The notes beneath the pieces are model-generated. The model was given only the letters and a program-made list of their open reading frames with translations, searched no databases and was not told the origin of the DNA. DNA of 64,000 nucleotides from Mytilus trossulus (taxonomy: Eukaryota), in the NCBI RefSeq assembly GCF_036588685.1, contig NC_086382.1, positions 55,800,001 through 55,864,000 of the forward strand. The letters are read 5' to 3'. The position numbers and the translations under genes are program-made. The number at the start of each line of letters is the position of its first letter. Within the stretch, counting starts at the first letter, position 1. Positions 3,308 to 59,024 of this stretch are shown piece by piece.

Positions 3308-3680
3308 TGATAGTTATAAAGTTACCAGGATTCCAATTTAGTACACCAGACGCGCGTTTCGTCTACATAGGACTCATCAGTGATGTTCGTATCAAAATAG
3401 TTATAAAGCCAAACAAATACACATATGAAGAGCATTGAAAATCCGAACTTCCAAAAAGTTGTGCCAATAAGGCTAAGATAATCTATGCTTGGGATAAGAA
3501 AATCCTTAGTTTTTCGAAATTCAATTTTTTGTAAACTGGAAATTTATAAAAATGACCACATAATTGATATTTCTGTCAACACCGAAGTGCTGACTACTGG
3601 GCTGGTGATACCCTGGAGGACGAAACGTCCACCAGTAGAGGCATCGACCCAGTGGTGTAAATAATTATCAAAGTTACCAG
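3308..3680 (-). mobile_element. Non-LTR retrozyme monomer (~352 nt unit) with terminal direct repeat
   Basis: The motif aagttaccag recurs 352 nt apart (3319-3328, 3671-3680), and the unit contains an intact minimal hammerhead. Confidence 0.8.
3344..3385 (-). ncRNA. Type I minimal hammerhead ribozyme
   Basis: Minus strand CAUCA CUGAUGA GUC CUAUGUA GAC GAAA CGCGCG UC / UGGUG: intact core, stem II GUC/GAC, palindromic stem III, stem I CAUCA/UGGUG. Predicted cleavage is between 3349 and 3348. Confidence 0.85.
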
Positions 3681-21428: not shown

Positions 21429-21960
21429 TGTTTGAATATGTTTGTTAGCTTGTTGGTCATGAATGTGTGTCTCTAATATTTAATTAACTGTGCATTTGTA
21501 TTCAGATATTGCAGATCAAATTTATTTGTTCATTGTGTAATCATACGTTTTTTGATTGAGTTAAGTCTGCCAATTGATATTTTATCGTGTGTTTTTCTAT
21601 GTTGTGATGTTATGCTATTGTTTCAGAAAAAGGGAGAAGGTTTGGATCCATTAAAACGTTTAATCCCGCTGCAAATGTTTGAACCTGTCCTAAGTCAGGA
21701 ATCTGATGTACAGTAGTTGTCGTTTGTTTATGTAATATATACGTGTTTCTCGTTTTGTTTATATAGATTAGACCGTTGCTTTTCCCGTTTGAATGGTTTT
21801 ACACTAGTAATTTTGGGGCCCTTTATAGCTTGTTATTCGGTGTGAGCCAAGGCTCCGTGTTGAAGGCCGTACTTTAACCTATAATGGTTGACTTTTTAAA
21901 TTGTTACTTGGATGGAGAGTTGTCTCATTGGCACTCACACCACATTTTCCTATATCTATT
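21429..21960 (+). mobile_element. 5'-truncated copy of the same Naiad 3' end, inverted relative to the full element
   Basis: Near-identical reverse complement of 23873-24421 by visual alignment; both copies end ...gcactcacaccacat(c/t)ttcctatatctatt. Confidence 0.9.
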
Positions 21961-23202: not shown

Positions 23203-24695
23203 GCGTCGTCTCTTATATATTAACAGATTAAATTTCTTATGTATATTAATTGAATTATTTTGCATAAAAAATAAGCTAAATGTTATCATACACTAAGTAC
23301 TATGTCAATTTTCTTCATAAAAATAGTTTTTAATATAGTTGTACTTGTTATATCTTACATAAAGTACAACTTTTCCCTAAAACAGATAGAAAGTGTAAAG
23401 CCTGAGATAAGTAACGGTCAATTAGCTTCTGGAGTGAAATATAGGTATTAATATTCAAGTTTAGGTTGTTATGCAATTTAAGGTAGATTCATGGTATACC
23501 GCCATCTTGCATTGTATAATCACAATACAAAATCGGTCTAGTTATTTGCCTCAATCTGCAAATTTGGAGACATATTTGCTATTCAATGGTTAGACTGTTT
23601 TTCTATTTAAAGAAAACTTGTTAATTAATCGTATTATACATAATATTTTAACAAATATAATCTGTTTTGGTTTTAAAATAAAAAATTTTCAAATGAGCCA
23701 TTTACGGTGAAATAACTCTTTTAGTACAACATTTATACTGGGCTAATAGGGATTTTTTTTATTTTTACTTGTAGCAAGAAAACAAGTTCCTACTATGTTT
23801 GACCTTAAGTCATATAGCAGCAACCAAATATTTATATCTTACAAGTTATTCTGTTGGCGATAAAATCATCTGAATAGATATAGGAAGATGTGGTGTGAGT
23901 GCCAATGAGACAACTCTCCATCCAAATAACAATTTAAAAATTAAACCATTATAGGTTAAAGTACGGCCTTCAACACGGAGCCTTGGCTCACACCGAACAA
24001 CAAGCTATAAAGGGCCCCAAAATTACTAGTGTAAAACCATTCAAACGGGAAAACCAACGGTCTAATCTATATAAACAAAACGAGAAACGAGAAACACGTA
24101 TATATTACATAAACAAACGACAACTACTGTACATCAGATTCCTGACTTAGGACAGGTGCAAACATTTGCAGCGGGATTAAACGTTTTAATGGGCCCAAAC
24201 CTTCTCCCTTTTTCTGAAACAATAGCATAACATCACAACATATAAAAACATATAAAAACATACGATAAAATATCAATTACCAGACTTAACTCAATCAAAA
24301 AACGTATGATTACACAAAGAACGAATAAATTTGATCTGCGATATCTGAATACAAATGCACAGTTAATTAAATATTAGAGACAAACAGTCATGACCAAAAG
24401 GCTATCAAACAAATTCAAACACACTGAGAAATATTTAACCAATCAATGTTCACTTTAGAAAAAAAACGTTTTTTTATAATCTTGAAGTTTATACAAATGT
24501 TGTAAGAATAAGTGAAAAATTGAAGATATTACAAATAATCAAAGCTGGTATACAGCCAAGATCCATATAAATAAAAAATGACAAAAAAGCAGTATAAACA
24601 GTATCAACAGGTCGAATTAACAAGAAAATACGATTTGAGAGTACTCGCAGTTACTGACAGCTAGTTAAAAGCCAAAACCAATTAATAGTAAAAAA

Positions 24696-24779
24696 TCATG
24701 CATCAGAGACTAAAATCGACTAAAACACATCACAGGGATTTAGTATTTTAACGTCATTAATAGTCAAAGAAGACATGAC
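24696..24779 (-). promoter_or_regulatory. Eukaryotic SECIS element (form 2-like) in the retroelement 3'UTR
   Basis: Minus strand reads GACUA UUA AUGAC GUUAAAAUAC UAAAUCCCUGUGAU GUGUUUUAGU CGAU UU UAGUC. Helix I is GACUA/UAGUC, the core is UGAC/CGAU (tandem G.A/A.G), helix II is 10 fully paired bp (WC/GU), followed by an apical A run and an AUC/GAU mini-stem. Confidence 0.88.
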
Positions 24780-24900
24780 TAGTGCAATGCCAAAAATAAA
24801 TGTATCGACAGGTAGTAGTATAGTGAAGAGCGACTTCTATAGAAATAAAAGTTAACGTGGCTGTGTCCCCTATACATCTCGTCTCAAAAGATAATGAAAT

Positions 24901-27900
24901 TTAGTTATGTTTTAATTTGCTAATGACAAAATCAATATTAGTGCCAATGTGAACTATATTCAGAGATCTAATTACAATATTGGTACGATAACCCTTACTT
25001 ATAAGTTTGTTTAAAGGTTCGATGAGTTTACAAGGATCACATAGTGATTTCCTCGCTTTAAGTACAATATTACCATAAAATTTAGGATGAGAAATACCAT
25101 TTTTAATAAGCTTTCTACAGGTATAGCCAAATTTACTAATCAAATCTTTGTATCTATGAAAGAATTTAGTAAAAGTTTTAAGTAATTTATGGTATCGAAA
25201 TCCCTGACACAACAATTTACCAGTGATGCATTGATTACGTTCGTTAAAATCTATGACATCAGAACACACACGGGCAAACCGAACGAGTTGCGATATATAA
25301 ACACCGTATGATGGAGCTAAAGGCACATCGCCGTCTAAAAAAGGAAAATTAACAATAGGAAATGAAAAATCGTCTCTTTTGTCGTAAATTTTAGTGTGAA
25401 GTTTCCCGTTTGAAATTGAAATGTCTAAATCTAGAAAAGGACAACTGCTGCTGTTTATGTTAGATTTAGTTAAAGTAAGTTCGTTTGGGTAAATTTCTGA
25501 AGTATATTTAGAGAACTCTGGATTATTCAACGAAAAACTATCATCCAGATAACGGTAGGTATTTTTGAATGTATCAACCAAATGTAACAATGATGGGTCT
25601 TTACTGAGTTTGGTCATAAACTGAAATTCATAGCAATATAGAAATAAATCTGCTATTAAAGGGGCACAGTTGGTGCCCATAGGAATACCTACTACCTGAC
25701 GATACACTTTATCGCCGAAACGTACATAAATGTTATCAAGCAGAAAGTTTAAAGCTTCAATCATATCCTCACATTTCCAGTAAGTGTATCTAGCATACTT
25801 TCCTTTTTCGTTACAGAAAAAGGCCTTAAACGAGTTACAGCAAATAAAATTACAATGAGATTTTTCGAAAGACCATTTTATCAAATACAAAAACTTTTTC
25901 TTTATAAGATTGTGTGGAAGTGTAGTGTACAGAGTAGAAAAATCATAACTGTCAACAGAATTGTAAGGACCATTGAAAGCATGTATTTTATCTAAAACCT
26001 CTAAAGAATTTTTAACACTCCAAAAATAATTAATACCATTATTTTCATAAGCTTTATTACAAAAGTTAATAACCAGTTCTTTGATAGTAGTAAGGGAGGT
26101 GGTTAGAAGCACTGATAGATTAGTAGTAGAACACTTACTCGAAGCGGAGATGAAACGGAATTTAAATGGTTTTTTGTGTAATTTCGGTAACCAGTACATG
26201 GTAGGGACTTTCAAATGTTCGGAAGATGCTTTAAACTGGGCAGTGGCAGTGGTATGCTTGTTAACGATTTGACTCTCTGTGGTGCGCACTGACCTGAATG
26301 TAGAGGAATTTATTATTTCGTTTTGAAGAACTGTCGTGTAGTATATGCGTCACACCACCACTACATTATTTGCTGCCTTGTCTGCCGGTACGAACACAAA
26401 CCGCTCTGCGAGTACCTTGAGTTTGTTTTTTATTCTAGAAATGGGTATATCATGGTTCCTATTATTAATTTCAGAATTGTTTTCTAAATGAGATATTCGA
26501 ATATCAACAGTATTCATAATTTTATTCAAATAACTGTCTAAAGATTTTTTATCGAATTTTTCACGTTTGCACCAATTTTTACAATAGGCAGACAGAGCGT
26601 CTTTAATGACCTGACGACACTGTTTCCAATCTATTGTAGACGGAGGACGGTATTTCGGTCCTTTCTTTAGAAAAGTTATGACTTCACGGTCATCGACTAT
26701 GTTGAGGTCTCCTGTGATAACATGACCATAGGGAACATATTTAAAACTAGATGTTTCGCAATCTCAAGTGGAAGGAACATTATTTTCTATATTGACGTCT
26801 GTTGTAATTGACGTATAATTGAAAATCAAATGTCTGCTCGGTTTTTTATAAGAATACGAAATAATGGGTTGTTCTATATTATCAAAATATGGAGGTATTA
26901 AGCTATAGACAGAAGAGTCATTGAATATGCTAGACAAATTAATAAAATCAATACCTCTATTTATATATTTTAATTTGAGAAAATGTCGTTTACGATTTTC
27001 AGGTTTATCAATAATAGGAAAAAGCCTGTGATGACAAAAGGCTGTAATAATACGGGTGTATCCATAAAATGGGCTAAAAAAAGAAATTTTATCACAATCA
27101 AGAAAAATAGCATATAATTTACTTATAGGTATCTGACCCAGTTTGCATAATACTTGATGTCTGCCATTATTCTTTATTATAGATAACAGATCAGCAAGTG
27201 TATAATTTATACGATGTTTAATACGTTGATTGCGGTTCTTGCGTTTACCATGAGACCTATTATTTCTAAGTCGTTTATCAACAATATTAATGACATCGAT
27301 ATGAGTTTTAGATATGTTCCCCTGCCCTAATATTTTATCATTTAGACCGAGAGGATAAGCTGTTTGAAGTCTTTTTATCCAAAACAATTCGCGAACTTCG
27401 CGTGATTTTTCAAATTGCTTGTGTGATTCTCCTGGTTGTTTTTGAACGGTTTCGAGCGGTTGGAATTTTATATATTTCAGAATATGATTATGCTTATCTA
27501 AATGCTGATATACTAAACTTTTGAATTTTTTGGGTCTACGAAAGCGGTACAGATGTTCTTGATTTCTTCTGAAATACTCTCGTCCCGTCTGTCCCACATA
27601 TTGAATACCACACTTAGGTTGGGTTCAAGTTACCACATATATTAGGTTTTGAGTTTTTCAGGTAATATCACAGGAAAAGGAAAGCGAAAAGGTTCTCCCG
27701 TTCACTGTTGACCTTATAGTATTTTGAGAAGTTAATCTAAAACAAGTTAGTCATTTTTTGGCATTGCACGGGAAAATTTGTGGATATCCACGTGCATTTT
27801 TGTTAAATAATCTGGCTGTAGTGGCATTACCAATACGTTTATTTATGCACGTAGATAACCTAGAAGTTGTGTTGTTGATAATATTTTTTGTCTTCTGTAT

Positions 27901-27966
27901 TACACAGATTATAATTGTAAGTTTTCAAGAGGAAAAAAAGGCCACTGTCAAAAAGGAATGAATCAT
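24901..27966 (-). CDS. GIY-YIG endonuclease/reverse transcriptase protein (~1020 aa) with 5-6 in-frame UGA codons, predicted selenoprotein
   Basis: Hand translation joins track ORFs 26764-27597 and 24901-26289 in the same frame. The only interruptions are TGA at 27751-53, 27658-60, 27625-27, 26764-66 and 26350-52, plus 27925-27 if the nearest upstream in-frame ATG (27966) is used. The frame ends at TAA 24901-03. The start codon is uncertain. Confidence 0.88.
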
Positions 27967-35004: not shown

Positions 35005-35422
35005 CTGTATTTTTGTCTATCTGATGAGTTAAGCCTTTTTCTACTGATTTTTATAGTTCGTTCTTATGTTGGACTGTTAAACAACTGTCCCAGGTTAATG
35101 GGAGGGTTGAGATCCCGCTAACATGTTTCAACCCGCCACATTATTAATGTATGTGTCTGTTCCAAGTCAGGAGCCTTTAATTCAGTGTTTGTCGTTTGTT
35201 TTTGTGTTACATATTTGTTTTTCGTTCATTTTTTTTACATAAATTAGGTCGTTAATTTTTTCGTTTGAATTGTTTTACATTGTCTTATCCGGGCCTTTTA
35301 TAGCTGACTGTGTGGTATCGGCTTTGAAGGCAGAACGGTGATCTATAGTTGTTAATGTCTGTGTCATTTTGGTCTTTGGTGGATAGTTGTCACATTGGCA
35401 ATCATACCTCATCTTTTTTTAA
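35005..35422 (+). repeat. Diverged relative of the Naiad 3' terminal region
   Basis: Colinear with 21545-21955 (gagttaag, ccgc, aagtcagga, gtcgtttgtt, gcctttatagct, gaaggc, gttgtc.cattggca..cat). Confidence 0.7.
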
Positions 35423-38048: not shown

Positions 38049-39714
38049 TTACACAGGGAAAAGTGCCACGCGTGTTTTACGTATATTTTACATATGTTAA
38101 ACATGTGTTTGGTAACGCATGGGAAACATCTTTTTCCTACCACACATGTAAAACGCATGTTTTAAACATGCGTTATTCATGCGTTTTACGCATGAATAAT
38201 ACATGTTATGTAAAACACATGTTAAAAACATGCGTTTTACGCATGAATAATACATGTTATGTAAAACACATGTTAAAAACATGCGTTATTCGTGCGTTTT
38301 ACACATGAAAAATATATGTAATGTTAAACGCATGTTTCAAAACCATGCGTTAAGCATGTGTTGTAAGAAACATGTGTATAATATGCGTTTTAAATGATGC
38401 GTATAACATGTGTGAAACAAACATGCGTATAATGCATATATTTCAAATCATCCATAAAACCTTTGTCAAGTTAGCTAGTTCACATTCCATATGTTCCACA
38501 AAACCAAGACGACTTCTGTTTACTTTTGAAGGCTGTTCCCTAGACATAATTGCTTTAATCAGTTTAATTTGGACTCTGTTTGGTAGTAGTCCAATTGGCA
38601 GCATACAACATCTTTTTATGTTTATTTTGACCACAAATCTCCTTTCAACAAGCAACATCAGTATCATATTACAGACAAGACTTCACTTTTCATTAGCTCT
38701 GTTTGAATACACCAATAAACAAAAGAAATGTCTGTAACACGATTTTCATGTTTCTAAAACCTTTATCAAGTACATTTGACACTAAGATGTTTGAAAAGAC
38801 AATGATATGAAATATTTGATGGAATAAAAACCTACAATCTTTGGTCTCTGTAGTTTCATTGGCAGTAATACCACAACTCTTTTATACAGAGGTCAAAATT
38901 ATCTTAAAAAAATTTTGTGGAATGTTGTACATGTATTTGACAATTTTTGTTAAAATGTTACTCATGGTTAAACTAAAACGTACACATTTGTTGGCTTATG
39001 CATATAATACATGTAATATGAAAAGGAAAACCCAAAAAGTGTATTAATGGTTCCTTTAGCATCAATTTAAATACAATTTTGAAGTTGTGTCCCTTGCATG
39101 TTAAATGATCTGAGACTGTATAATTGTTTTTAAACATATTAAATGAAAAAGTCAATAAATCTGCTTAAGAATATATTTATATTTTTTCTCTCTGTTGTCT
39201 ATTTGTTGCAGAATATAAATTTGAAAAAAACTTGGATTTTGATTTCACTCTACTTTTATTTACAGCATTCTCAAAACGTTACAATCAACTTTTTTTTGTT
39301 TTTGTTGTTGACATAATAACATTATCAATTGAATGTTCTTTCTTCTAAATGTCACTCTCCTTGATGTTGTCTTTATCTGAAAAGAAAACAATAATATTCA
39401 TAATCATACATTTAAACTTAATTTGATTTATTCCCATATACTGTAAGTTGTTAGTTTTAAACATACTTGTAATGAAATAACCTCAGTGACTTAAAACATG
39501 CTTTTCTGTCTCATTTTTGTCTCTTGTGGAGAGTTGTCTCATTGGCAGTAATACCACATCTACTTTTTTTATATTTTTCTCCTTTTGATATAACATATTT
39601 GAATAAAACTGGAAAGTATTTTATAAATATAAATATTTGTTTTGCTATCAGTAAATTAAAACCAAACTAAATATTATTGTTATACACATATGTATGTTTA
39701 CCAGTTTTACAAAC

Positions 39715-39960
39715 TGTTGATACCTATATTTTGGCATTGTACAAGATCATGTTCTTATCCTATGACTAATGGCGGTATATTCACTAAATCCATTAGATGT
39801 GTACTGATTGATATTTAAGTCTCAGACACATGATTTTTGGTTTTACATTTGGCATGAGTTTTGCTTATTTTAAATTCTTCTTCAATGGTCTCTGGTAATG
39901 CTGGTGGAGAGTAATGACTCATTGGCAGTTGGCAATCATACCACATCTTCTTATTTTTAT
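39715..39960 (+). mobile_element. Decayed Naiad-related 3'UTR fragment including a SECIS relic
   Basis: 39715-39840 aligns by eye with the reverse complement of 24690-24812 (tg.tgatac..ttttggcattg..catgt..gacta..ctaaatcc..gatgtg..gat..agtctc.ga..catgattttt). The shared 3' tail ttggcaatcataccacatcttc follows. Confidence 0.7.
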
Positions 39961-40734: not shown

Positions 40735-40747
40735 TAATACATGCCAT

Positions 40748-40930
40748 TTTCTCGTTTGAATTGTTTTACATTGTCTTATCAGTGTTTGGCCTTTTCTAGC
40801 TGACTATGCAGTATGGGCTTTGATCATTGTTGAAGGCCGTACAGTTACCTATAGTTGTAAATGTCTGAGTTATTTTGGTCTTTTGTGGATAGTTGTTTCA
40901 TTGGCAATCATACCACATCTTCTTTTTTAT
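40748..40930 (+). repeat. Short repeat sharing the Naiad-type 3' tail
   Basis: Matches 35260-35420. Further tails occur at ~11730-11845, 39510-39575, 42810-42920 (-) and 43850-43945. Confidence 0.65.
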
Positions 40931-42540: not shown

Positions 42541-42924
42541 TCTTGCACCATACAAAAAATATACTTACAATTGCTGAATTTTACTTGAAACATTTATCAG
42601 GCGTCTTCCCTTGCCATTTTCTTCACCATTTGTGGAATTTTTTAAACATCCATGTACATGTACATTCCTGCATGATATAGGGTAGGTCAAATTTGATAAC
42701 TAGCCTAAAGGATAAAAAGAAATCCATTTCATAAAAATCTTACAGAAACTATTTTCATATTAATTTACAATTACAGTGTTCATGTGAAAGCCAAAATGAA
42801 GTTCATAGATATAAGAAGATGCGGTATGAGTGCCAATGAGATTACTCTTCATCCAAGTCACAATTTATAAAACAAGTAAAAGTAAACCATTAAAGGTCAA
42901 AGTACAGTCTTCAACATAGAGCTT

Positions 42925-43460
42925 TTTATAAATTTATAAAATCTGGTAACTCAAAAACCCAATATCTACAAATATAAAAATTGTAAGGGATCTCATGTCA
43001 GAAGAAATAAACAATTCACCAAATTTTTTGCAAGAAAAAGAAAACATTCTTGGGTTATTGACCGAAAACTGGAAAATCAACCTTTTTTATGGATATAAAA
43101 CCTAGTAACTCAGAAACGTAAAATGTAAAATTTATAAAAATTGAAAAGGAGTTCATGTCAACAGATATTAAAAAAAAATCACCAAAATTTCTTGCAAGTA
43201 GGAGAAAACATTTTTGAGTTATTGACTAAAAACTGAAGAATCATCCTTTTTTGATGAACAACCCTGCTACTCAGAAACTTAAAATATAAAATTTATAAAA
43301 ATTGAAAGGGAGCTCATGTCAAATTCACCAAAGTTTTATGCAAAATGGTTATATTAAAGCATTTATGAATTCATGTCCAACATGTTGACCATGGACAGAC
43401 AGACAACGGTATACCATAATACATACATGTATGTACTCCCATAAATGGGTGTATAAAAAG
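42925..43460 (+). repeat. HINE-like repeat with ~160 bp tandem units
   Basis: Three units of aactca(g/a)aaac...aaaattgaaa..ga..tcatgtca..ttcaccaaa, then gacagacagac and an A-rich end. Confidence 0.55.
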
Positions 43461-46400
43461 AAGAAACAAGAAAAACTTATGAACTTAGTAACTACATCAA
43501 CAAACAAAAACAAACAAAAACTACTAAACATCAGATTCCTGACTAAGGACAGGTGACACACAACTGCAGGGGTTTTAAATGTTTAAATGGTATCAAACTT
43601 GTACCCTTATCTGAAACAATAGTGGCAATTGTAAACTAAAGTTAACACAAGGAAACAAAAATTGATCATCATCCAATGTAATCCTGATAGATGGACCAAC
43701 AGTGCCTTAAATTCTTAATGCCTACATAAGGCAGTCTGCATAAAGTCTCAGTGGCAAATATTTCAGATATCAGTATAAACAATTCATGTCAATCAAATAA
43801 TTAAACTAAGAAGTGTATTTTATACTGAACTCACTATATTGGTTGAGGGAATATGTTGATGGCAGTACGGTGACCTATAATTGTTAATGTTTGTGTCATT
43901 TTGGTCTTTTGTGGATAGTTGTAATCATACCACATCTTCTTTTTCATACATATTTTGAACAGGTGTACAAATATTTTATATATTAAAACAAACCTTAGTA
44001 TAATGATAAAAACTGATTGTATCAAGTGCTACAATATTATATATTATTGCAGTGAGGTTAAAATCTCTGGCATTTATTGATTATCCACAAATACTTATCC
44101 GAGAATTTTTTTTCTCTATCATATACATGTATGTTATGATATTTTTCTAAGATCATCCATTAGAACTTGCAGTTGTCCTATAAAAATAGGAGATGTGATA
44201 TGATTGCCAATGACAAAACATTCAAGCAGATATGATTGGCTGCATTTGAACATCTCATTTATTATGGAGTCGAAGCTGCTTGATTTATTGTTTTTAGTGG
44301 TTGACAGGGGCTTGTTTAGTAGGCCAGACCAGCTTTTACTGTCAATAGCGATCGCTAACCTACATTTTTTGTAAATGTATATATTGTTTTTTTTACATAG
44401 GATAACGAATGCCATTGACAGTAAAAGCTTGTCTGACCCACCTGTGAGGGTTTAACTGCTTCTTTAATCTCTTTTTATACGATATATTTTGAGTGGTACA
44501 TGTATAATGCTATTGTGTCGTTATTGCCAATTCTTTTTTTCTTGGTGGTCCTTGGAAAATCTACTGGTCCTCACTATCAAGTCTATTAATAAATACTAAA
44601 ATTGTGTCAGTCCTATGCAACATCTTGGTGGTTAAATCCTGAGGACTGACACTTTTCGCAAACTCTGATTATACATTTCAATGGTTATAAACAGATAAAA
44701 GAGGGACGAAAGATACCAGAGTCATAAATCGAAAAATAAACTGACAACTTCATGACTAAAAATGAAAAGGACAAACCAATAGTTCACACGACACAACATA
44801 GGAAACTAAAGAATAAACAACACGAACCCCTCTTTTTTGGAAAAAAGTTTGTTTCCAGGTTTTGAAAATATTTGTTTTGGACCCTGAGAAAAAAAAATGT
44901 TTGTTTCACCCTCAGCTGCCACTATATGTAATGCTAAAATTGAAAGAAAAAAATTGTTTTCGGTTTGTCGCTAAAAAAATAGATTGTTCTTCGCCGAAAG
45001 GCAGAGACGTATTATATGTCTCTGCCGAACGGCCCGAAGGCGAAAAAAAAAGTTTGCACAGAAAAAACAACATAGCCCCCCCCCCCCCCCCCCCCAGCCC
45101 CCCCCCCCCCGAAAATCAAATGGTTGCTGAATACAGAATGCTGCCTAAGTTCGTGCATGTCTTTATAATTAAAACTGGATGAATCACAGAAGATTGATTC
45201 GGGTGAAGCTCTACTGTGATAATCATATTCAAGTGAGGTATATTTGCCGTTATTGTTGATAGGATTTCAAACTCCTATAGGATAGTCCTGTGGATAAATA
45301 AATCAGTTTTGGAAATGGCAAAATATCCTTTATGAAATGTTAATCAAATAAAATATTAAAGTTGAATTCTTACCCATCTTGTCTTTAGTGTCCTAGATTG
45401 AAGATATCCTACATTGTCCTAGCTGCATCTCATTTCTTCCATAAAATTTGCTTTCACGAATCATTCTGTATTCACGAATCTTAGTCTCACGAATCATGAT
45501 GTCAATATCATTGTCGTCTGTCTGAACGCTCGTTTCCGGGTGAACCGTACGGGCTAATATTAAACCAAAGACGAAACATTTAAGATTCCATTTAAACGGC
45601 ATTAAATGATTGAAATCTATCCGAAGATTTATAAGTCATTAAAACAAGTAAACATGATTAATAATTGTATGTAACCGATTGGACCTTAAAAAACTATATG
45701 AATGTGGATTCCGTAATTTCCTCGGAATCTCCATGCCAGTGTAATGGTATTTCCCGCGGTTATTTTTGTACAATAAAATACGGTATAACTACAATTTTGC
45801 AAAGACTCAATCAGTGTAAGTATATCGATACTGTGAATCAATTAACATGAAAAATTGTAATTTCTAATTAATTTTACTGGACACATAATGATATTAAACA
45901 CACGGGCACCTGGTCAATTCGTCACCTTAGTTAAGCCCATTTAAGTCAAATCGGCACCTTTTTTCAGGAAATTTCTGCAATTGATTTTTTAACTGCCACC
46001 TTATATTAAAAACGGTTTTCATCTTTTATATGCAAGAAGTTTTTGGAACTCTTCTCTACTGCTGTATATAGTAATACAGACGAGGAAAAAAAGAAGAGAA
46101 AACACTTAAATTTTATCACAGATTTTTTTTTTGAATAATCTGCCTTTCCTGATTTTCCTGATCTTTTCAGTGGCAGATCCATAACTTTTTCTGACTGACC
46201 TAACGGGGGCCCGCTCCAGTCATGCTCCAATGATTCCCTATATAATCAACAAAATTTTCCCCACAAAGGGGGGGGGGTAAATGTATAATGGTAGATGGAG
46301 ATCCAGCACTGTATATAAATAGAGCACCTAGATTCTACATGTAAAAATATGGTTTCTTTTTCAAAGGAGGTTTAAGGATCAGTTCAATTATATTAGATAG

Positions 46401-55470: not shown

Positions 55471-56927
55471 AGTGTCAGTTGTATTTATTCATCTTACTTA
55501 GTTTTCGTCTGATGTTATTAAAATGTTCATACGATTTATTCAAATGTACTATTCTTTATAAAATGTTTCTAGTTCCAATATTTGATGCCGTGTTAATTGT
55601 TCTATCTGTAGAGATAACAAGCCGGAAGTCTTTTCCAAAATCGCACCACTTATTCGATCGTATAATACTATGGACTGACTTCGAGTACGTCTAAAATACC
55701 TTATTTAACGGAAACAAAAATAAAGTAAAAATGCTTCCTCGCCACCGTTACAAATAAATAAGTATGCATTGCAAAAACAGTGCACTTGGTTGTTTAAATT
55801 GTTTTTAACATAAGAATAAGTGATATTTGAAATAATCAGTAAAGAAATCTAAATGGTGTTTTTATGTTTTCACTTTGTAATGGAATAAAGTTTATTTTAG
55901 AAATCATTGATGTGGGGTTAATTAACACTGTTACTATCACCGCTTGGCCCCTTTTAATCAATATTGTACATTGAACGATCGAGAGGGATATACTATCGAC
56001 ATACAGAACAAACATGTGTAAAAATCAGTTTAAATTGAAGCCCTATAAATAGTATCTACTCTAGCATGACTTATTTGTCAATTCTTTCGAAAAAAAACTC
56101 TTTAACTGAAGATTGAAATAAACAAATAATTTCCCCATAGGCGACAATGGTAGCCTTTTTCAAGATACCATCTTTAGAAAGTTGATTTTTTTAACGAAAG
56201 CCTGCTAGATTCAAGAGATAAGTTATTAGGACAGTATTTTGTGGTCCAAAAAATATAGGTTCGCGTTGCTTTTCTTAGCGTATTTTGTACTTATTTCCCA
56301 TGCCTATCAATTTTGCCCTAAAAAATACGTGTCTTGACATAGTGTTGAAAAGTTTTCTCAGTGCCTTTAGGGCTACTGAAAAATTTGTATTTTGTCTTTT
56401 GTATAAAGCAGAGTGCACGAAGTCTCTAATAATAGAAAAATAACTGGAGCACATATCGACCAATCAGGATTAGCCATACTCTTAATTCTGAATACCATGT
56501 TATGCTCATAAAATGGCTGCGCCAATAAAATCTAATGGTGTACTGTAACCTATAGGCGAATAGTTGCTGTTCCCGTAAATTTACACAAACAGTATCAAAA
56601 CTGACGTAAAATACAAAGACAAACTTGTAATGCTTTACACTAGCTAGCAATCGAACCAGGTTTAATCCAATATTTTCTACATAAAAATGCTTCCTCAAAT
56701 TTAGAAATATGACATTTGTTGTCTGATATTTTTTTTGGCTTTAAATTTTCCATTTTGGTAGGGACTTTCCGTTCATATCCTATCATGTCCATTCAGCGTC
56801 GGTTGAAAAATTGAAGCATGTTCAAAACTTCAAATGGACCCCCAACAGTTGAGGTTGATTTTATCAAGTCTTATTGACTCCCTCTTTTTTGCCACCAGAG
56901 TTCGGGATATTGTTTTTTCTGTAAATT

Positions 56928-57075
56928 TAAGGAATGACTGTAATACTTTTTTCTGTTTATGAAGAAATAACATGATAAATGTGGTTCACACTGAATAACC
57001 CATGGGTTATTTAAAATGTGCACCACATTTTTCATGTTATTTCAAAAAGGCAGAAAAAAAGACAGTCATTTCTTA
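56928..57075. repeat. ~150 bp imperfect palindrome
   Basis: aggaatgactgt..ttttttctg..gaaataacatga..atgtggt.cac..aataacccatgggttatt..gtgcaccacat..tcatgttatttc..cagaaaaaaa..acagtcatttct. Confidence 0.8.
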
Positions 57076-59024
57076 TGATTTGATTCTTAAATCCATTTTA
57101 AATTAGAATAAATCATGAGAAAAACGTTGATGACATCACGGTCACATGACAAACTTATGTCTATGTGTTGACAAACAAAACGATGTCAATCAATCAGAGG
57201 ACGCTTTACATCCAAAATTAAATTATATTTCTTTACCCCTCTGTGTTTCTTAAACATGTTAAATGGTTATGAAAACATTGATATGAAAAAAAACTTGTAG
57301 TAAAGGAAAGCAATACTGTGATGTTGTTTTTTATTATAACGCTGGTTTTAACGACGTAAAATCTTGAATGAGCTAATGAAATCTTAGGACTTTTTATTTA
57401 TAAAACTAAAAGACGCTAATGGCTACGGCTGCTTAAGTTTTTAATAGAATAATTTGAGCATTTATGGCTTTTGATTTTCTTTTATTAAAAAGTAATCACT
57501 AAAAAAAAAATTAATAAACAGATTTTTTAACAGTCTTTTTACAGTGATATTTCTATTGAATTTCCATGACGATATTGTTTTAAGAATATTTAATGTAAGT
57601 TGATCCTAATACCCGTTGCAAATTGATATTCTTTTTATGATTTTCAGTGTTCTCTACTTTTGATTTTTTTTCATTTTTCTGTGAGATTTCATGATATCGT
57701 GTCACTTGTTTTAATTTGATTTTGTTGTACGTTGAATCAGAACATTTGGAACGTGCTATGTTTAAATGATAATGATTCCCTGGTGGTTCTGTCCGTTCAT
57801 TTTTATTTCGAAATATAAAATCTATTTACTAATGTTATAATTTTGGTTTAGTTTAAACATATCTATTTATAGTGGATTAAGAAACAAGTTTTGCAACTTA
57901 TATAAACCTCTTTCCACTTTGCGGGTGCGAGTGTTGCCTCGTAATGGCATTAGCCTGCTCTTTTGTCGAAATCTATGAGGGTGTCTTTAATGTGCAAGAG
58001 ATAAGGCTCTCTCTCAACACGGGTCAGCCATTAATCGTATTTTTATAATATCAAAAAATTCTCGGTTCTATTGTGTTTTTACAATTTCCCAATATTTTTT
58101 TTTATTCACCGCCATAGTTCATAGTTACAATTAAATGCACAAGACATGTACATAATACGAATATAATGTTCTTTATAAATCTAATTTCTTTTATTCCATA
58201 ATTTATTGTTTATGTCGATGATCCTTAGAAATAAATACAAATTGATATTTAAAAATAAGGGTTAACCAGGCATTAATATATGAACCATTGAGAAGCCGCT
58301 GACTTCTCTTTAGTATACATGCTTAAAACGGATTGAAAACGTGTATAATCACTGATAGTGCAAAACAAATTGTGAAAAGTTAGCTTAAACATCTACCATT
58401 CCAACAAATATAAACGTATTTAATCGTACAGATATAGTGGTTTTTGCTATGAAACTTCATATAAGTTTAATCATTTTGTTAGAAGAAACTGTATACCCTT
58501 CTGGTTTAATTAGCCTCAGGTGTTAAATCTTTAATTTAGCGTCTCTGTTTGTTTTTATTTCGACTTTTCTCCTGTTTGGTTTCTCTCAAATCATGTTGTT
58601 TTGTATCTCTATGACCTTTATTTATTTTTGCTGGCTGTTGTGTTGTCCTCTCTTTTCAAACAATGTTTCAATTCACAGCAGCTAGTGAAAACGCAGTTTT
58701 ACAGATTATTTGAATTTGTTTTGTTCATAACAGGTATCGTATTTGTATTAAGTTCTAGTTGGTTGGAATTCACCGGTGAAGCAGTGATGCTGAATTAATC
58801 AAACTAGTCTTAACAATATTAAACTGTACAACATGCTGTATTATACATAGTATTTAAATTCGTAAACCTTTATTCTTCTTAAAGATATATCTCTGTAACA
58901 CAGTTGTATAATAAAGTATCATAAAACAAGTAAAGGACCAAAATATCGTAGCTTAAACTATGCAACGTCATGATAGTGCTTTAGTTTTTTTTGTTTTACT
59001 TATCTAAAAACTGAAAACATCTTC

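What the first reader, a model, noticed from the sequence alone, without database searches (positions are those of the whole stretch)
24901..27966. Retrotransposon ORF hidden by five UGA codons at cysteine positions: a multi-selenocysteine EN-RT protein
Seen: over ~950 codons from 27753 to the TAA at 24901 there is no frameshift and no TAA/TAG, but five TGA. Contexts are PCNAKK-U-LTC (27751), CDIT-U-KTQNLIY (27658), IYVVT-U-TQPKCGIQYVG (27625), PST-U-DC (26764) and DKAANNVVVV-U-RIYY (26350). Established: PLE endonucleases have Cys at the C..C.., C...N(V/L)IY and IY...C..C..Y(V/I)G positions, and Naiads have a CxC linker. From my recollection of Naiad proteins, a Cys also follows DKA.NN. Inference: random decay in AT-rich DNA would mostly give TAA stops and indels, so these are programmed Sec codons and the element is intact rather than dead. 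From memory, Sec-encoding Naiads have been reported in spiders and clams (Craig et al. 2021). The class is therefore not unprecedented, but this family, host and Sec pattern may be undescribed, and ordinary annotation would miss it.
Basis: partly seen in the sequence, partly recalled or inferred. Interest (0 to 1): 0.95.

Follow-up and report, generated by a model that had tools for sequence, protein, structure and literature searches.

The report
Five-selenocysteine Naiad retrotransposon, truncated copy
This is a slightly 5'-truncated, dead copy of a young, abundant Naiad-type Penelope-like retrotransposon whose endonuclease/reverse-transcriptase gene must have five UGA codons read as selenocysteine. 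Elements of this kind were first described in 2021; this family has more such codons than any reported, one of them at a new site.

Summary
On the minus strand, window 27889-24904 is one open frame with exactly five in-frame TGA codons, no TAA or TAG, no frameshift, and a TAA at 24901.

All five TGAs sit opposite invariant cysteines of Naiad homologues. They are fixed in 28 of 30 genomic copies (97.5-99.5% identical).

A sister family in the same genome (63% amino-acid identity) shares four of them and has TGT at the fifth. Between the two families synonymous sites are saturated and non-synonymous change is low (dN/dS about 0.15 or less), including the 482 codons after the last TGA.

A SECIS hairpin lies 136 nt after the TAA. 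Related SECIS elements occur in TGA-bearing relatives only and show strong covariation. The host has tRNA-Sec and SepSecS.

So the selenocysteine reading is well supported by computation, but not biochemically.

Two corrections:
- The window copy is not intact. It lacks about 436 nt of 5' end, including the ATG.
- The class is known (Craig et al. 2021; three or four UGAs).

New here are five UGAs, one in the CxC linker, and repeated Cys/Sec switching within one clade. The scan had already found related copies elsewhere in this genome (s1-820507, s1-820123).

The parts
23873..27889 (-). 5'-truncated copy (4017 bp) of Naiad family 'A'. Full copies are about 4.45 kb.
   Evidence: Homology to 29 other genomic copies starts at 27889 and ends at 23873/4. 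The other copies share about 436 nt more at the 5' end.
24901..27889 (-). EN-RT open frame, codons 7-1001 of the family's 1001-codon ORF, plus the TAA. The ATG is missing.
27751..27753 (-). TGA U1 (codon 52). Second Cys of the CX4-U-xx-C zinc-finger-like motif.
   Evidence: Cys in 10 of 10 full-length homologues that cover the site. TGA in 29/30 copies. TGA in 17/20 copies of sister family B.
27658..27660 (-). TGA U2 (codon 83). The Cys just before the GIY-YIG motif.
   Evidence: Cys in 11/11 homologues. TGA in 30/30 family A and 20/20 family B copies.
27625..27627 (-). TGA U3 (codon 94). First Cys of the CCHH motif inside the GIY-YIG core.
   Evidence: Cys in 11/11 homologues. TGA in 29/30 family A and 20/20 family B copies.
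26764..26766 (-). TGA U4 (codon 381). First Cys of the CxC linker motif, a Sec site not reported before.
   Evidence: Cys in 11/11 homologues. TGA in 30/30 family A copies and TGT in 20/20 family B copies. 57 of 150 database cluster representatives end exactly before this codon.
26350..26352 (-). TGA U5 (codon 519). The Cys eight residues after DKA.
   Evidence: Cys in 11/11 homologues. TGA in 30/30 family A and 20/20 family B copies. 70 of 120 RT-piece hits start just after it.
27307..27768 (-). N-terminal GIY-YIG endonuclease domain with its two Cys-rich motifs (approximate bounds).
   Evidence: Motifs read. The AlphaFold model of a Cys-type homologue matches the I-TevI catalytic domain (target TM 0.81-0.83, rmsd 2.0 A).
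25117..26382 (-). Reverse transcriptase, from DKA through the core motifs (DFSTLY, GIPMG, YLDD) (approximate bounds).
   Evidence: 3397 RT homologues at E<=1e-20.
24708..24765 (-). SECIS element (AUGA ... AAA ... GA), starting 136 nt after the TAA.
   Evidence: Rfam SECIS_1, 28.4 bits, E 0.015, below the gathering score of 35. Fold z-score -4.2. 52.3 bits with clade model R1. Covariation.
23873..24900 (-). 3' UTR (1028 nt).

Best explanation
Window 27889-23873 (minus strand) is a dead-on-arrival, 5'-truncated insertion of a very young, high-copy Naiad-clade Penelope-like retroelement.

The family's single 1001-codon ORF encodes an N-terminal GIY-YIG endonuclease, a KR-rich/CxC linker and a reverse transcriptase. 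It contains five UGA codons (52, 83, 94, 381, 519) at invariant cysteine positions of the Cys-rich, presumably metal-binding motifs.

In transcripts of full-length copies these UGAs are recoded to selenocysteine by the host machinery. That machinery comprises tRNA-Sec, SepSecS and, by inference, SBP2 and eEFSec. It is recruited by a single SECIS hairpin in the element's own 3' UTR, about 1.6 to 3.0 kb downstream of the UGAs.

Shown here: the codon positions, their fixation, purifying selection across and beyond them, SECIS structure and covariation, the co-occurrence of TGA with SECIS, and the host genes. Inferred: actual Sec insertion, and that the Sec residues act as metal ligands.
For: (1) Five TGAs lie opposite Cys in every one of 10-11 full-length homologues of 27-35% identity.

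(2) All five are TGA in 28/30 genomic copies. The exceptions are TTA and TCA, never TGY or TGG. 8/30 copies have an ATG-to-TAA frame of 1001 codons with exactly five TGA, and one more is open over 998 codons.

(3) Sister family B in the same genome (63% aa identity) has TGA at U1, U2, U3 and U5 and TGT at U4. Between A and B, pS is 0.72-0.80 (saturated) and pN is 0.21-0.27 in every inter-TGA segment. This includes the 482 codons after the last TGA; dN/dS is about 0.11-0.14 where it can be computed.

(4) In 80 independent metagenome contigs the five columns hold only TGA, TGT or TGC, apart from a few doubtful alignments at U4 and single ones at U2 and U5. There are 46 TGAs in these 5 columns against 18 in the other 996, none at the other Cys columns, and no TAA or TAG at the five sites.

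(5) All TGA-bearing loci form one clade on an RT tree built without those columns (SH-aLRT 99).

(6) Rfam SECIS_1 hits occur in 9 of 20 TGA-bearing loci, all on the coding strand just after the ORF, against 0 of 19 Cys-only loci. With clade model R1, 13 of 18 further clade loci hit against 0 of 25.

(7) The SECIS consensus has 19 pairs, 14 with compensatory changes and 91% of cells paired. 0/500 shuffles reach this, and slid controls are far lower. AUGA, AAA and GA are invariant.

(8) The host has two tRNA-SeC(TCA) genes and a multi-exon SepSecS gene.

(9) The same phenomenon is published for four Naiad families (PMC8557442).
Against: There is no direct evidence of Sec insertion.

Family A's own SECIS scores below Rfam's gathering cut-off (28.4 vs 35 bits), and its 3' core reads CGA rather than the commoner UGA.

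Five successive UGA recodings with a single SECIS would be inefficient by what is known of most selenoprotein mRNAs. Selenoprotein P uses two SECIS elements.

RNA evidence is thin. Depth over the ORF was about 1x or less in the one raw RNA-seq run sampled, and it was not strand-resolved.

U1 is TTA in 3/20 family B copies, so that site may be dispensable.
Confidence: 0.88

Rival explanations
1. The TGAs are genuine stops. Family A is a non-autonomous or dead lineage copied in trans by the machinery of another Naiad family, and the open frame is just recent inheritance.
For: Copies are only 0.3-2.5% diverged, so an open frame within the family alone proves little. Cys-type and other Naiad families exist.
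Against: The frame has stayed open and under strong purifying selection across the whole A/B divergence, with synonymous sites saturated, while four TGAs are shared. TGA alternates only with TGT/TGC at these columns across a whole clade. The SECIS co-occurs with TGA and covaries.
Confidence: 0.04
2. The UGAs are read through, but not as selenocysteine. Either near-cognate tRNAs (Cys, Trp, Arg) insert another residue, or the host uses a variant code in which UGA is a sense codon.
For: Position at Cys columns alone cannot separate Sec from UGA=Cys. Some database gene calls translate these TGAs as W under an alternative code table.
Against: TGA never appears at the other 29 Cys columns, which argues against a general UGA=Cys code. 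A structurally conserved, covarying SECIS accompanies TGA-bearing lineages only. The host keeps tRNA-Sec and SepSecS. The host is an animal with multi-exon genes, for which no nuclear UGA reassignment is known (established knowledge).
Confidence: 0.05
3. The TGAs are an assembly or sequencing artefact in this window.
For: None found.
Against: The same codons are present in 29 other loci on 13 contigs, in contigs of independent public runs from several studies, and in metagenome contigs L055/L056.
Confidence: 0.01

Closest known systems
[quoted passage not shown] 2021, PMC8557442)
   Same: Same architecture: N-terminal GIY-YIG EN, CxC linker, DKA-type RT, pLTR/5'-truncation habit, and the element's own SECIS in the 3' UTR. 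UGA at the Cys before GIY-YIG, at the first Cys of CCHH, and at the Cys 8 residues after DKA. These are U2, U3 and U5 here.
   Different: Those families have three or four UGAs; this one has five. It adds UGA at the second Cys of CX2-5CxxC, reported only in a spider family. It also adds UGA at the first Cys of the CxC linker, which has not been reported. The SECIS starts 136 nt after the stop, not 1-21 nt. I could not compare sequences directly because the paper's supplement is not held.
Naiad_Sdum and Naiad_Smim, Stegodyphus spiders (same paper)
   Same: Multi-Sec Naiads. Naiad_Sdum has UGA at the first and second Cys of CX2-5CxxC. Both have UGA at the pre-GIY-YIG Cys and at DKA+8.
   Different: Here the first Cys of that finger is a normal Cys codon, and the CCHH and CxC sites are UGA. 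Chelicerate Naiads lack the IFD insertion. This family has an 85-residue gap between RT motifs A and B, which suggests the IFD is present. The host here is marine and probably a bivalve.
Family B, the four-UGA Naiad family of the same genome (loci L035-L054)
   Same: 63% amino-acid identity and a colinear 1002-codon ORF. TGA at U1, U2, U3 and U5, with a SECIS in the 3' UTR. Likewise young and abundant, and often in tandem arrays with a period of about 4016 bp.
   Different: TGT instead of TGA at the CxC site. The SECIS lies 52 nt after the stop and has different helix sequences. The UTRs are otherwise unalignable.
Selenoprotein P, the classic multi-Sec protein
   Same: Several UGA codons are decoded as Sec in one mRNA. 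Bivalve SelP is very Sec-rich, as cited in PMC8557442.
   Different: This is a host gene, not a mobile element. It uses two SECIS elements and clusters most Sec residues in a C-terminal tail (established knowledge). Here one SECIS was found, and the Sec sites are spread over 467 codons at conserved Cys positions.

Membership tests
Naiad clade of Penelope-like elements (Craig et al. 2021) | GIY-YIG endonuclease placed N-terminal to the RT in a single ORF | tested here: met
   The motif order in the ORF is CX4UxxC, then U-x5-IY...YVG, R..EH, E..W and LGLND, and then DKA...YLDD. The model of a Cys-type homologue's N-terminal half matches I-TevI. Pfam itself found nothing.
Naiad clade of Penelope-like elements (Craig et al. 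2021) | CX2-5CxxC zinc-finger-like motif upstream of GIY-YIG, and a CCHH motif inside the core | tested here: met
   The Cys/U columns are conserved in all homologues. The His positions of CCHH were not examined individually.
Naiad clade of Penelope-like elements (Craig et al. 2021) | CxC linker motif between EN and RT | tested here: met
   U381-D-C383 aligns to C-x-C in 11/11 homologues. Both are invariant columns, C346 and C348, in alignment A3.
Naiad clade of Penelope-like elements (Craig et al. 2021) | DKA (not DKG) motif at the start of the RT | tested here: met
   PADKAANN is present in the ORF, and DKA is present in all aligned homologues.
Naiad clade of Penelope-like elements (Craig et al. 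2021) | IFD-like insertion (about 20 aa) between RT3(A) and RT4(B), absent in chelicerate Naiads | tested here: inconclusive
   The distance between motifs A and B is 85 residues. No canonical PLE was aligned here for comparison.
Naiad clade of Penelope-like elements (Craig et al. 2021) | No canonical hammerhead ribozyme in the element | tested here: met
   No Hammerhead hit in the window copy at E<=10 or in full-length copy L003 at E<=1. The same kind of search did find a hammerhead elsewhere in the window.
Naiad clade of Penelope-like elements (Craig et al. 2021) | PLE insertion habit: frequent 5' truncation and partial tandems (pseudo-LTRs) | tested here: met
   Start points are graded (query positions 78, 140, 156, 198, 209 ... 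554). At least 9 of 30 loci have an upstream partial copy ending about 436 nt before the full copy.
Naiad clade of Penelope-like elements (Craig et al. 2021) | Phylogenetic placement with named Naiad reference sequences | not testable with these tools
   The paper's protein supplement is not held. The databases searched carry no names for these proteins.
Eukaryotic selenoprotein gene | In-frame UGA aligned with Cys (or Sec) in homologues | tested here: met
Eukaryotic selenoprotein gene | SECIS element in the 3' UTR on the coding strand | tested here: met
   Family A scores 28.4 bits, below Rfam's cut-off. One relative passes at 38.8 bits. The clade-wide structure has 14 compensatory pairs and invariant AUGA, AAA and GA. 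SECISearch3 was not available.
Eukaryotic selenoprotein gene | Coding constraint continues downstream of the UGA | tested here: met
   pN 0.21 against pS 0.80 in the 482 codons after the last UGA.
Eukaryotic selenoprotein gene | Host possesses the Sec machinery | tested here: met
   tRNA-SeC(TCA) in two copies and SepSecS exons on C4. SBP2, eEFSec, PSTK and SPS2 were not searched.
Eukaryotic selenoprotein gene | Selenocysteine actually incorporated | not testable with these tools
   This needs 75Se labelling, mass spectrometry or ribosome profiling.

The most novel reading that the evidence does not exclude
A single bivalve-associated Naiad lineage captured a SECIS once. Since then it has flipped metal-ligand Cys codons to Sec and back many times. 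On the RT tree there are at least 13 switches over the five sites, six of them at the CxC site. Family A is the end point, with all five sites Sec.

Because every UGA lies upstream of the RT core, production of active enzyme, and hence transposition, would be gated by the host's selenium supply and Sec-decoding capacity. The many dispersed SECIS-bearing copies would also be raw material for new host selenoprotein genes.
Probability: 0.25. Interest if true: 0.75.

Novelty: new member of a known kind. Interest (0 to 1): 0.5.

Why it matters
Selenoprotein-coding transposons are known from only four families in one paper.

This genome adds two very active families. It shows that the trait defines a whole, widespread marine clade, with an independently checkable SECIS and a clean TGA/TGY alternation at five sites. 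It raises the number of Sec codons in a transposon protein to five and adds the CxC linker as a Sec site.

Practically, standard gene callers cut these ORFs at each TGA. 57 of 150 database representatives end at U4, and 70 of 120 start just after U5. Annotation of bivalve repeats and selenoproteomes is therefore systematically affected.

The family is also a natural system for studying processive multi-UGA recoding with a single SECIS.

Tried and rejected
- Pfam on the four stop-free pieces gave no family, so domain calls rest on motifs, homologues and a fold match.
DNA for database proteins therefore came from the search for related loci instead.
Family B's full copy and UTR were read from two overlapping loci of one tandem.
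- The paper's supplement is not held, so there was no direct comparison with Naiad_Scon, Mmer, Sdum or Smim.
- A 64-kb Rfam scan lost the SECIS hit that the 4.8-kb scan found. I attribute this to filters and E-value scaling, not to absence.
- RNA reads show depth of about 1x or less over the ORF and very high depth on the last 400 nt. They do not establish a full-length transcript or its strand, so I do not count them as support.
- The AlphaFold model could not be used to measure Cys-Cys distances because no coordinates are exposed. The idea that the five Sec positions form shared metal sites therefore remains an inference.
- A second SECIS in the 3' UTR, as in SelP, was sought with model R1 and not found. 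R1 also found nothing at window 39715-39960, where another first-stage note proposes an orphan SECIS.
- The host species was not identified because names are coded. About 14 large contigs, 1.3 Gb, about 31% GC and marine or mollusc-associated runs suggest a bivalve, possibly a mussel. This is inference only.
- Within-family substitution counts (23 non-synonymous to 18 synonymous among shared changes, and 192 to 85 among private ones with stop-creating changes counted as non-synonymous) point the right way but are too few to lean on.
Full report
**1. The observation**

Translating window:24901-27966 on the minus strand gives one frame. It has TGA at 27751-3, 27658-60, 27625-7, 26764-6 and 26350-2, and TAA at 24901-3. 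There is no TAA, TAG or frameshift between them. The frame has 21 TGT, 8 TGC and 5 such TGA codons.

A further TGA at 27925-7 is not part of the element, because homology to all other copies begins at 27889.

**2. What the stretch is**

The genome (1.3 Gb, 541 contigs) holds very many copies. The first look found 5229 candidates; of the 40 scored, the near-full-length matches are 97.5-99.5% identical.

Compared with 29 other loci, the window copy spans 27889-23873, or 4017 bp. That is 2986 nt of ORF, the stop codon and a 1028-nt 3' UTR.

Other copies share about 436 nt more at the 5' end. They often follow a partial upstream copy, which is the pseudo-LTR arrangement typical of Penelope-like elements. 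In those copies the ORF starts at an ATG 17 nt upstream of the window copy's break point (MILRNG|KNIINN...). It runs 1001 codons.

In 8 of 30 loci the frame is open from ATG to TAA over the full 1001 codons with exactly five TGA. One more (L022) is open over 998 codons.

The window copy therefore lacks its start codon and 5' UTR. It differs from the majority state at 18 positions, 9 of them non-synonymous. It is a dead-on-arrival, 5'-truncated insertion of a live or very recently live family.

**3. Domain content**

Pfam finds nothing in the stop-free pieces. The motifs match the Naiad clade as described in PMC8557442:
- CX4-U-xx-C
- U-x5-IY...U-x4-C-x3-YVG
- R..EH, E..W and LGLND
- a KR-rich block
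- U-x-C
- DKA
- the RT motifs through YLDD

An AlphaFold model of the N-terminal 526 residues of a Cys-type relative (L079; mean pLDDT 85) matches the I-TevI GIY-YIG catalytic domain (target TM 0.81-0.83, rmsd 2.0 A).

**4. Do the TGAs sit at cysteines?**

I translated a natural full-length copy with X at each TGA (X at 52, 83, 94, 381, 519). I aligned it to 11 full-length homologues from the 1.84-billion-protein library (27-35% identity). Every homologue that covers a site has Cys there.

Database gene calls are cut at these codons:
- 57 of 150 cluster representatives end exactly before codon 381, and 13 start just after codon 94. Several show W at the sites, which is TGA read under an alternative code table.
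- 70 of 120 RT-piece hits start just after codon 519.

**5. Are they fixed, and is the frame under selection?**

All five are TGA in 28 of 30 copies. The two exceptions are TTA and TCA, never TGY or TGG.

Within one young family this alone says little. The stronger test is a second family.

Family B is also very abundant in this genome. It is 63% identical in protein and colinear over 1002 codons. It has TGA at U1 (17/20 copies), U2, U3 and U5 (20/20), and TGT at U4 (20/20).

Between A and B synonymous sites are saturated (pS 0.72-0.80), while pN is 0.21-0.27 in every inter-TGA segment. That includes the 482 codons after the last TGA. Where dS can be computed, dN/dS is 0.11-0.14. The whole frame, on both sides of shared TGAs, has therefore been translated throughout the divergence of the two families.

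**6. Relatives outside this genome**

A metagenome scan returned 80 contigs at 28-99% identity.

At the five columns the codons are TGA, TGT or TGC only, apart from a few doubtful alignments at U4 and single ones at U2 and U5. Over about 52,700 aligned codons there are 46 TGAs in these five columns and none at any other Cys column. The other 996 columns hold 18 TGA, 25 TAA and 7 TAG, scattered in visibly decayed copies.

On an RT tree built without these columns, all TGA-bearing loci form one clade (28 rows, SH-aLRT 99). Inside it the patterns are mosaic (UUUUU, UUUCU, CUUUU, CUUCU, CCUCU and others). The minimum numbers of changes are 1, 2, 1, 6 and 3 for U1 to U5. This was a quick tree with several open forks, so the counts are rough.

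**7. The SECIS**

Rfam's SECIS_1 model hits window 24765-24708 on the coding strand. The hit starts 136 nt after the TAA, at 28.4 bits and E 0.015, which is below the gathering score of 35. The hairpin folds with z = -4.2.

Family B has one 52 nt after its stop (32.3 bits). The two UTRs are otherwise essentially unalignable.

In equal amounts of sequence, SECIS_1 hit 9 of 20 TGA-bearing contigs, always on the coding strand just after the ORF. One hit is above the gathering score (38.8 bits). It hit 0 of 19 Cys-only contigs. Hypergeometric p is about 8e-4 (my arithmetic).

Nine of these SECIS elements align to a consensus of 19 pairs:
- 14 pairs have compensatory double changes, and 91% of cells are paired.
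- 0 of 500 shuffles reach the observed values, and slid controls show 39-55% pairing.
- AUGA, the apical AAA and the 3' GA are invariant.

A model built from them (R1) found 13 more SECIS elements in 18 other clade contigs. Three of the four misses have 238 nt or less downstream of the RT match. It found none in 25 Cys-only contigs, and exactly one in the window.

In the host genome all 150 scored candidates matched at 64-79 bits on all large contigs.

Within family A the SECIS is the least variable part of the UTR: 4 differences in 1624 positions, against 70 in 3780 just upstream.

**8. Host machinery**

The host has two tRNA-SeC genes with anticodon TCA. It also has a multi-exon SepSecS gene.

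**9. Expression**

Public runs from 12 studies hold the element, several of them labelled RNA.

In the one raw RNA-seq run sampled, depth over the ORF is about 1x or less and not informative on strand. The last 400 nt are covered hundreds to thousands of times more. Contigs from other runs keep all five TGAs. I do not count this as evidence of translation.

**10. Mechanism proposed**

A full-length transcript carries one ORF. At codons 52, 83, 94, 381 and 519 the SECIS-bound complex delivers Sec-tRNA, so that the Cys-rich motifs of the endonuclease, the CxC linker and the DKA region contain Sec. Failure at any UGA yields a product without the RT.

Shown: steps 4-8 above. Inferred: actual insertion, its efficiency, and a ligand or redox role for the Sec residues.

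**11. Comparison with what is known**

In the library searched, Craig et al. 2021 is the only paper on such elements. It reports four families with three or four UGAs. The sites are the pre-GIY-YIG Cys and DKA+8 in all four, the first or first and second Cys of CX2-5CxxC in spiders, and the first Cys of CCHH in clams. The SECIS lies 1-21 nt after the stop.

Family A differs in four ways:
- It combines the clam and spider patterns.
- It adds the CxC site.
- It has five UGAs.
- Its SECIS lies further from the stop.

It is a new member of a known kind, not a new kind. Two earlier reports of this scan reached the same reading on other copies in this genome. I tested the claims independently here.

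**12. Limits**

Majority states were used only to count differences.
A bivalve, possibly a mussel, is my inference from genome size, about 14 large contigs, GC content and the labels of the runs.

Noticed in passing
window 3343-3386 (-): Type I hammerhead ribozyme, 38.9 bits, above Rfam's gathering score of 34. It is unrelated to the Naiad copy, which has none.
   Followed up: no
window 21429-21960: A 549-nt 3'-terminal fragment of the same family A (93% identical), in the opposite orientation, 1.9 kb beyond the element's 3' end. Shorter 69-80% matches to the 3' tail lie at 35146-35415, 40747-40922, 42805-42925 and 43504-43622.
   Followed up: partly
window 23873-24274: The last ~400 nt of the element are vastly over-represented in public runs. 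Summed contig depth is 84067 there, against 42 over the RT and 5-8 over the 5' part in run X1. This is far more than ordinary 5' truncation explains. The tail may be shared with other families or with a short non-autonomous element.
   Followed up: no
window 23906-23935, 24106-24135, 24331-24360 (+); 23942-23972, 24694-24727 (-): In a size-fractionated small-RNA run, reads with sharp ends about 30 nt apart pile up on both strands of the 3' UTR. One pile lies inside the SECIS. The size is piRNA-like.
   Followed up: no
L066:2560 and L069:1901: Two related metagenome contigs share an extra in-frame TGA opposite Asp 921 of family A. It may be a sixth, non-Cys Sec site, like the non-Cys UGA reported for Naiad_Scon.
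   Followed up: no
G000 C10:63.84-63.86 Mb and 64.46-64.49 Mb: About 50 tandem units of 891-900 bp each hold a tRNA-like gene scoring 45.9 bits on the tRNA-Sec model. A nearby singleton (L033) is called tRNA-Cys(GCA) with a tRNA-Ser(GCT) by ARAGORN. The arrays themselves were not examined.
   Followed up: partly
G000, e.g. C8:27.109-27.114 Mb, C13:47.964-47.972 Mb, C10:32.729-32.738 Mb, C14:74.289-74.298 Mb: Family B copies often sit in head-to-tail arrays of two or three units with a period of about 4016-4020 bp.
   Followed up: partly
window 38146-38308 and 56925-57078: Hairpin-rich repeats give sub-threshold hits to unrelated RNA families (RsaF, tsr1, MIR2646) on both strands. They are probably palindromic repeats, not those RNAs.
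   Followed up: no
P0241, P0266: Naiad RT fragments are filed in public databases as proteins of 'Candidatus Thiodiazotropha' MAGs. These bacteria are, to my knowledge, lucinid-clam symbionts, so the fragments are most likely host DNA binned into the bacterial genomes.
   Followed up: no
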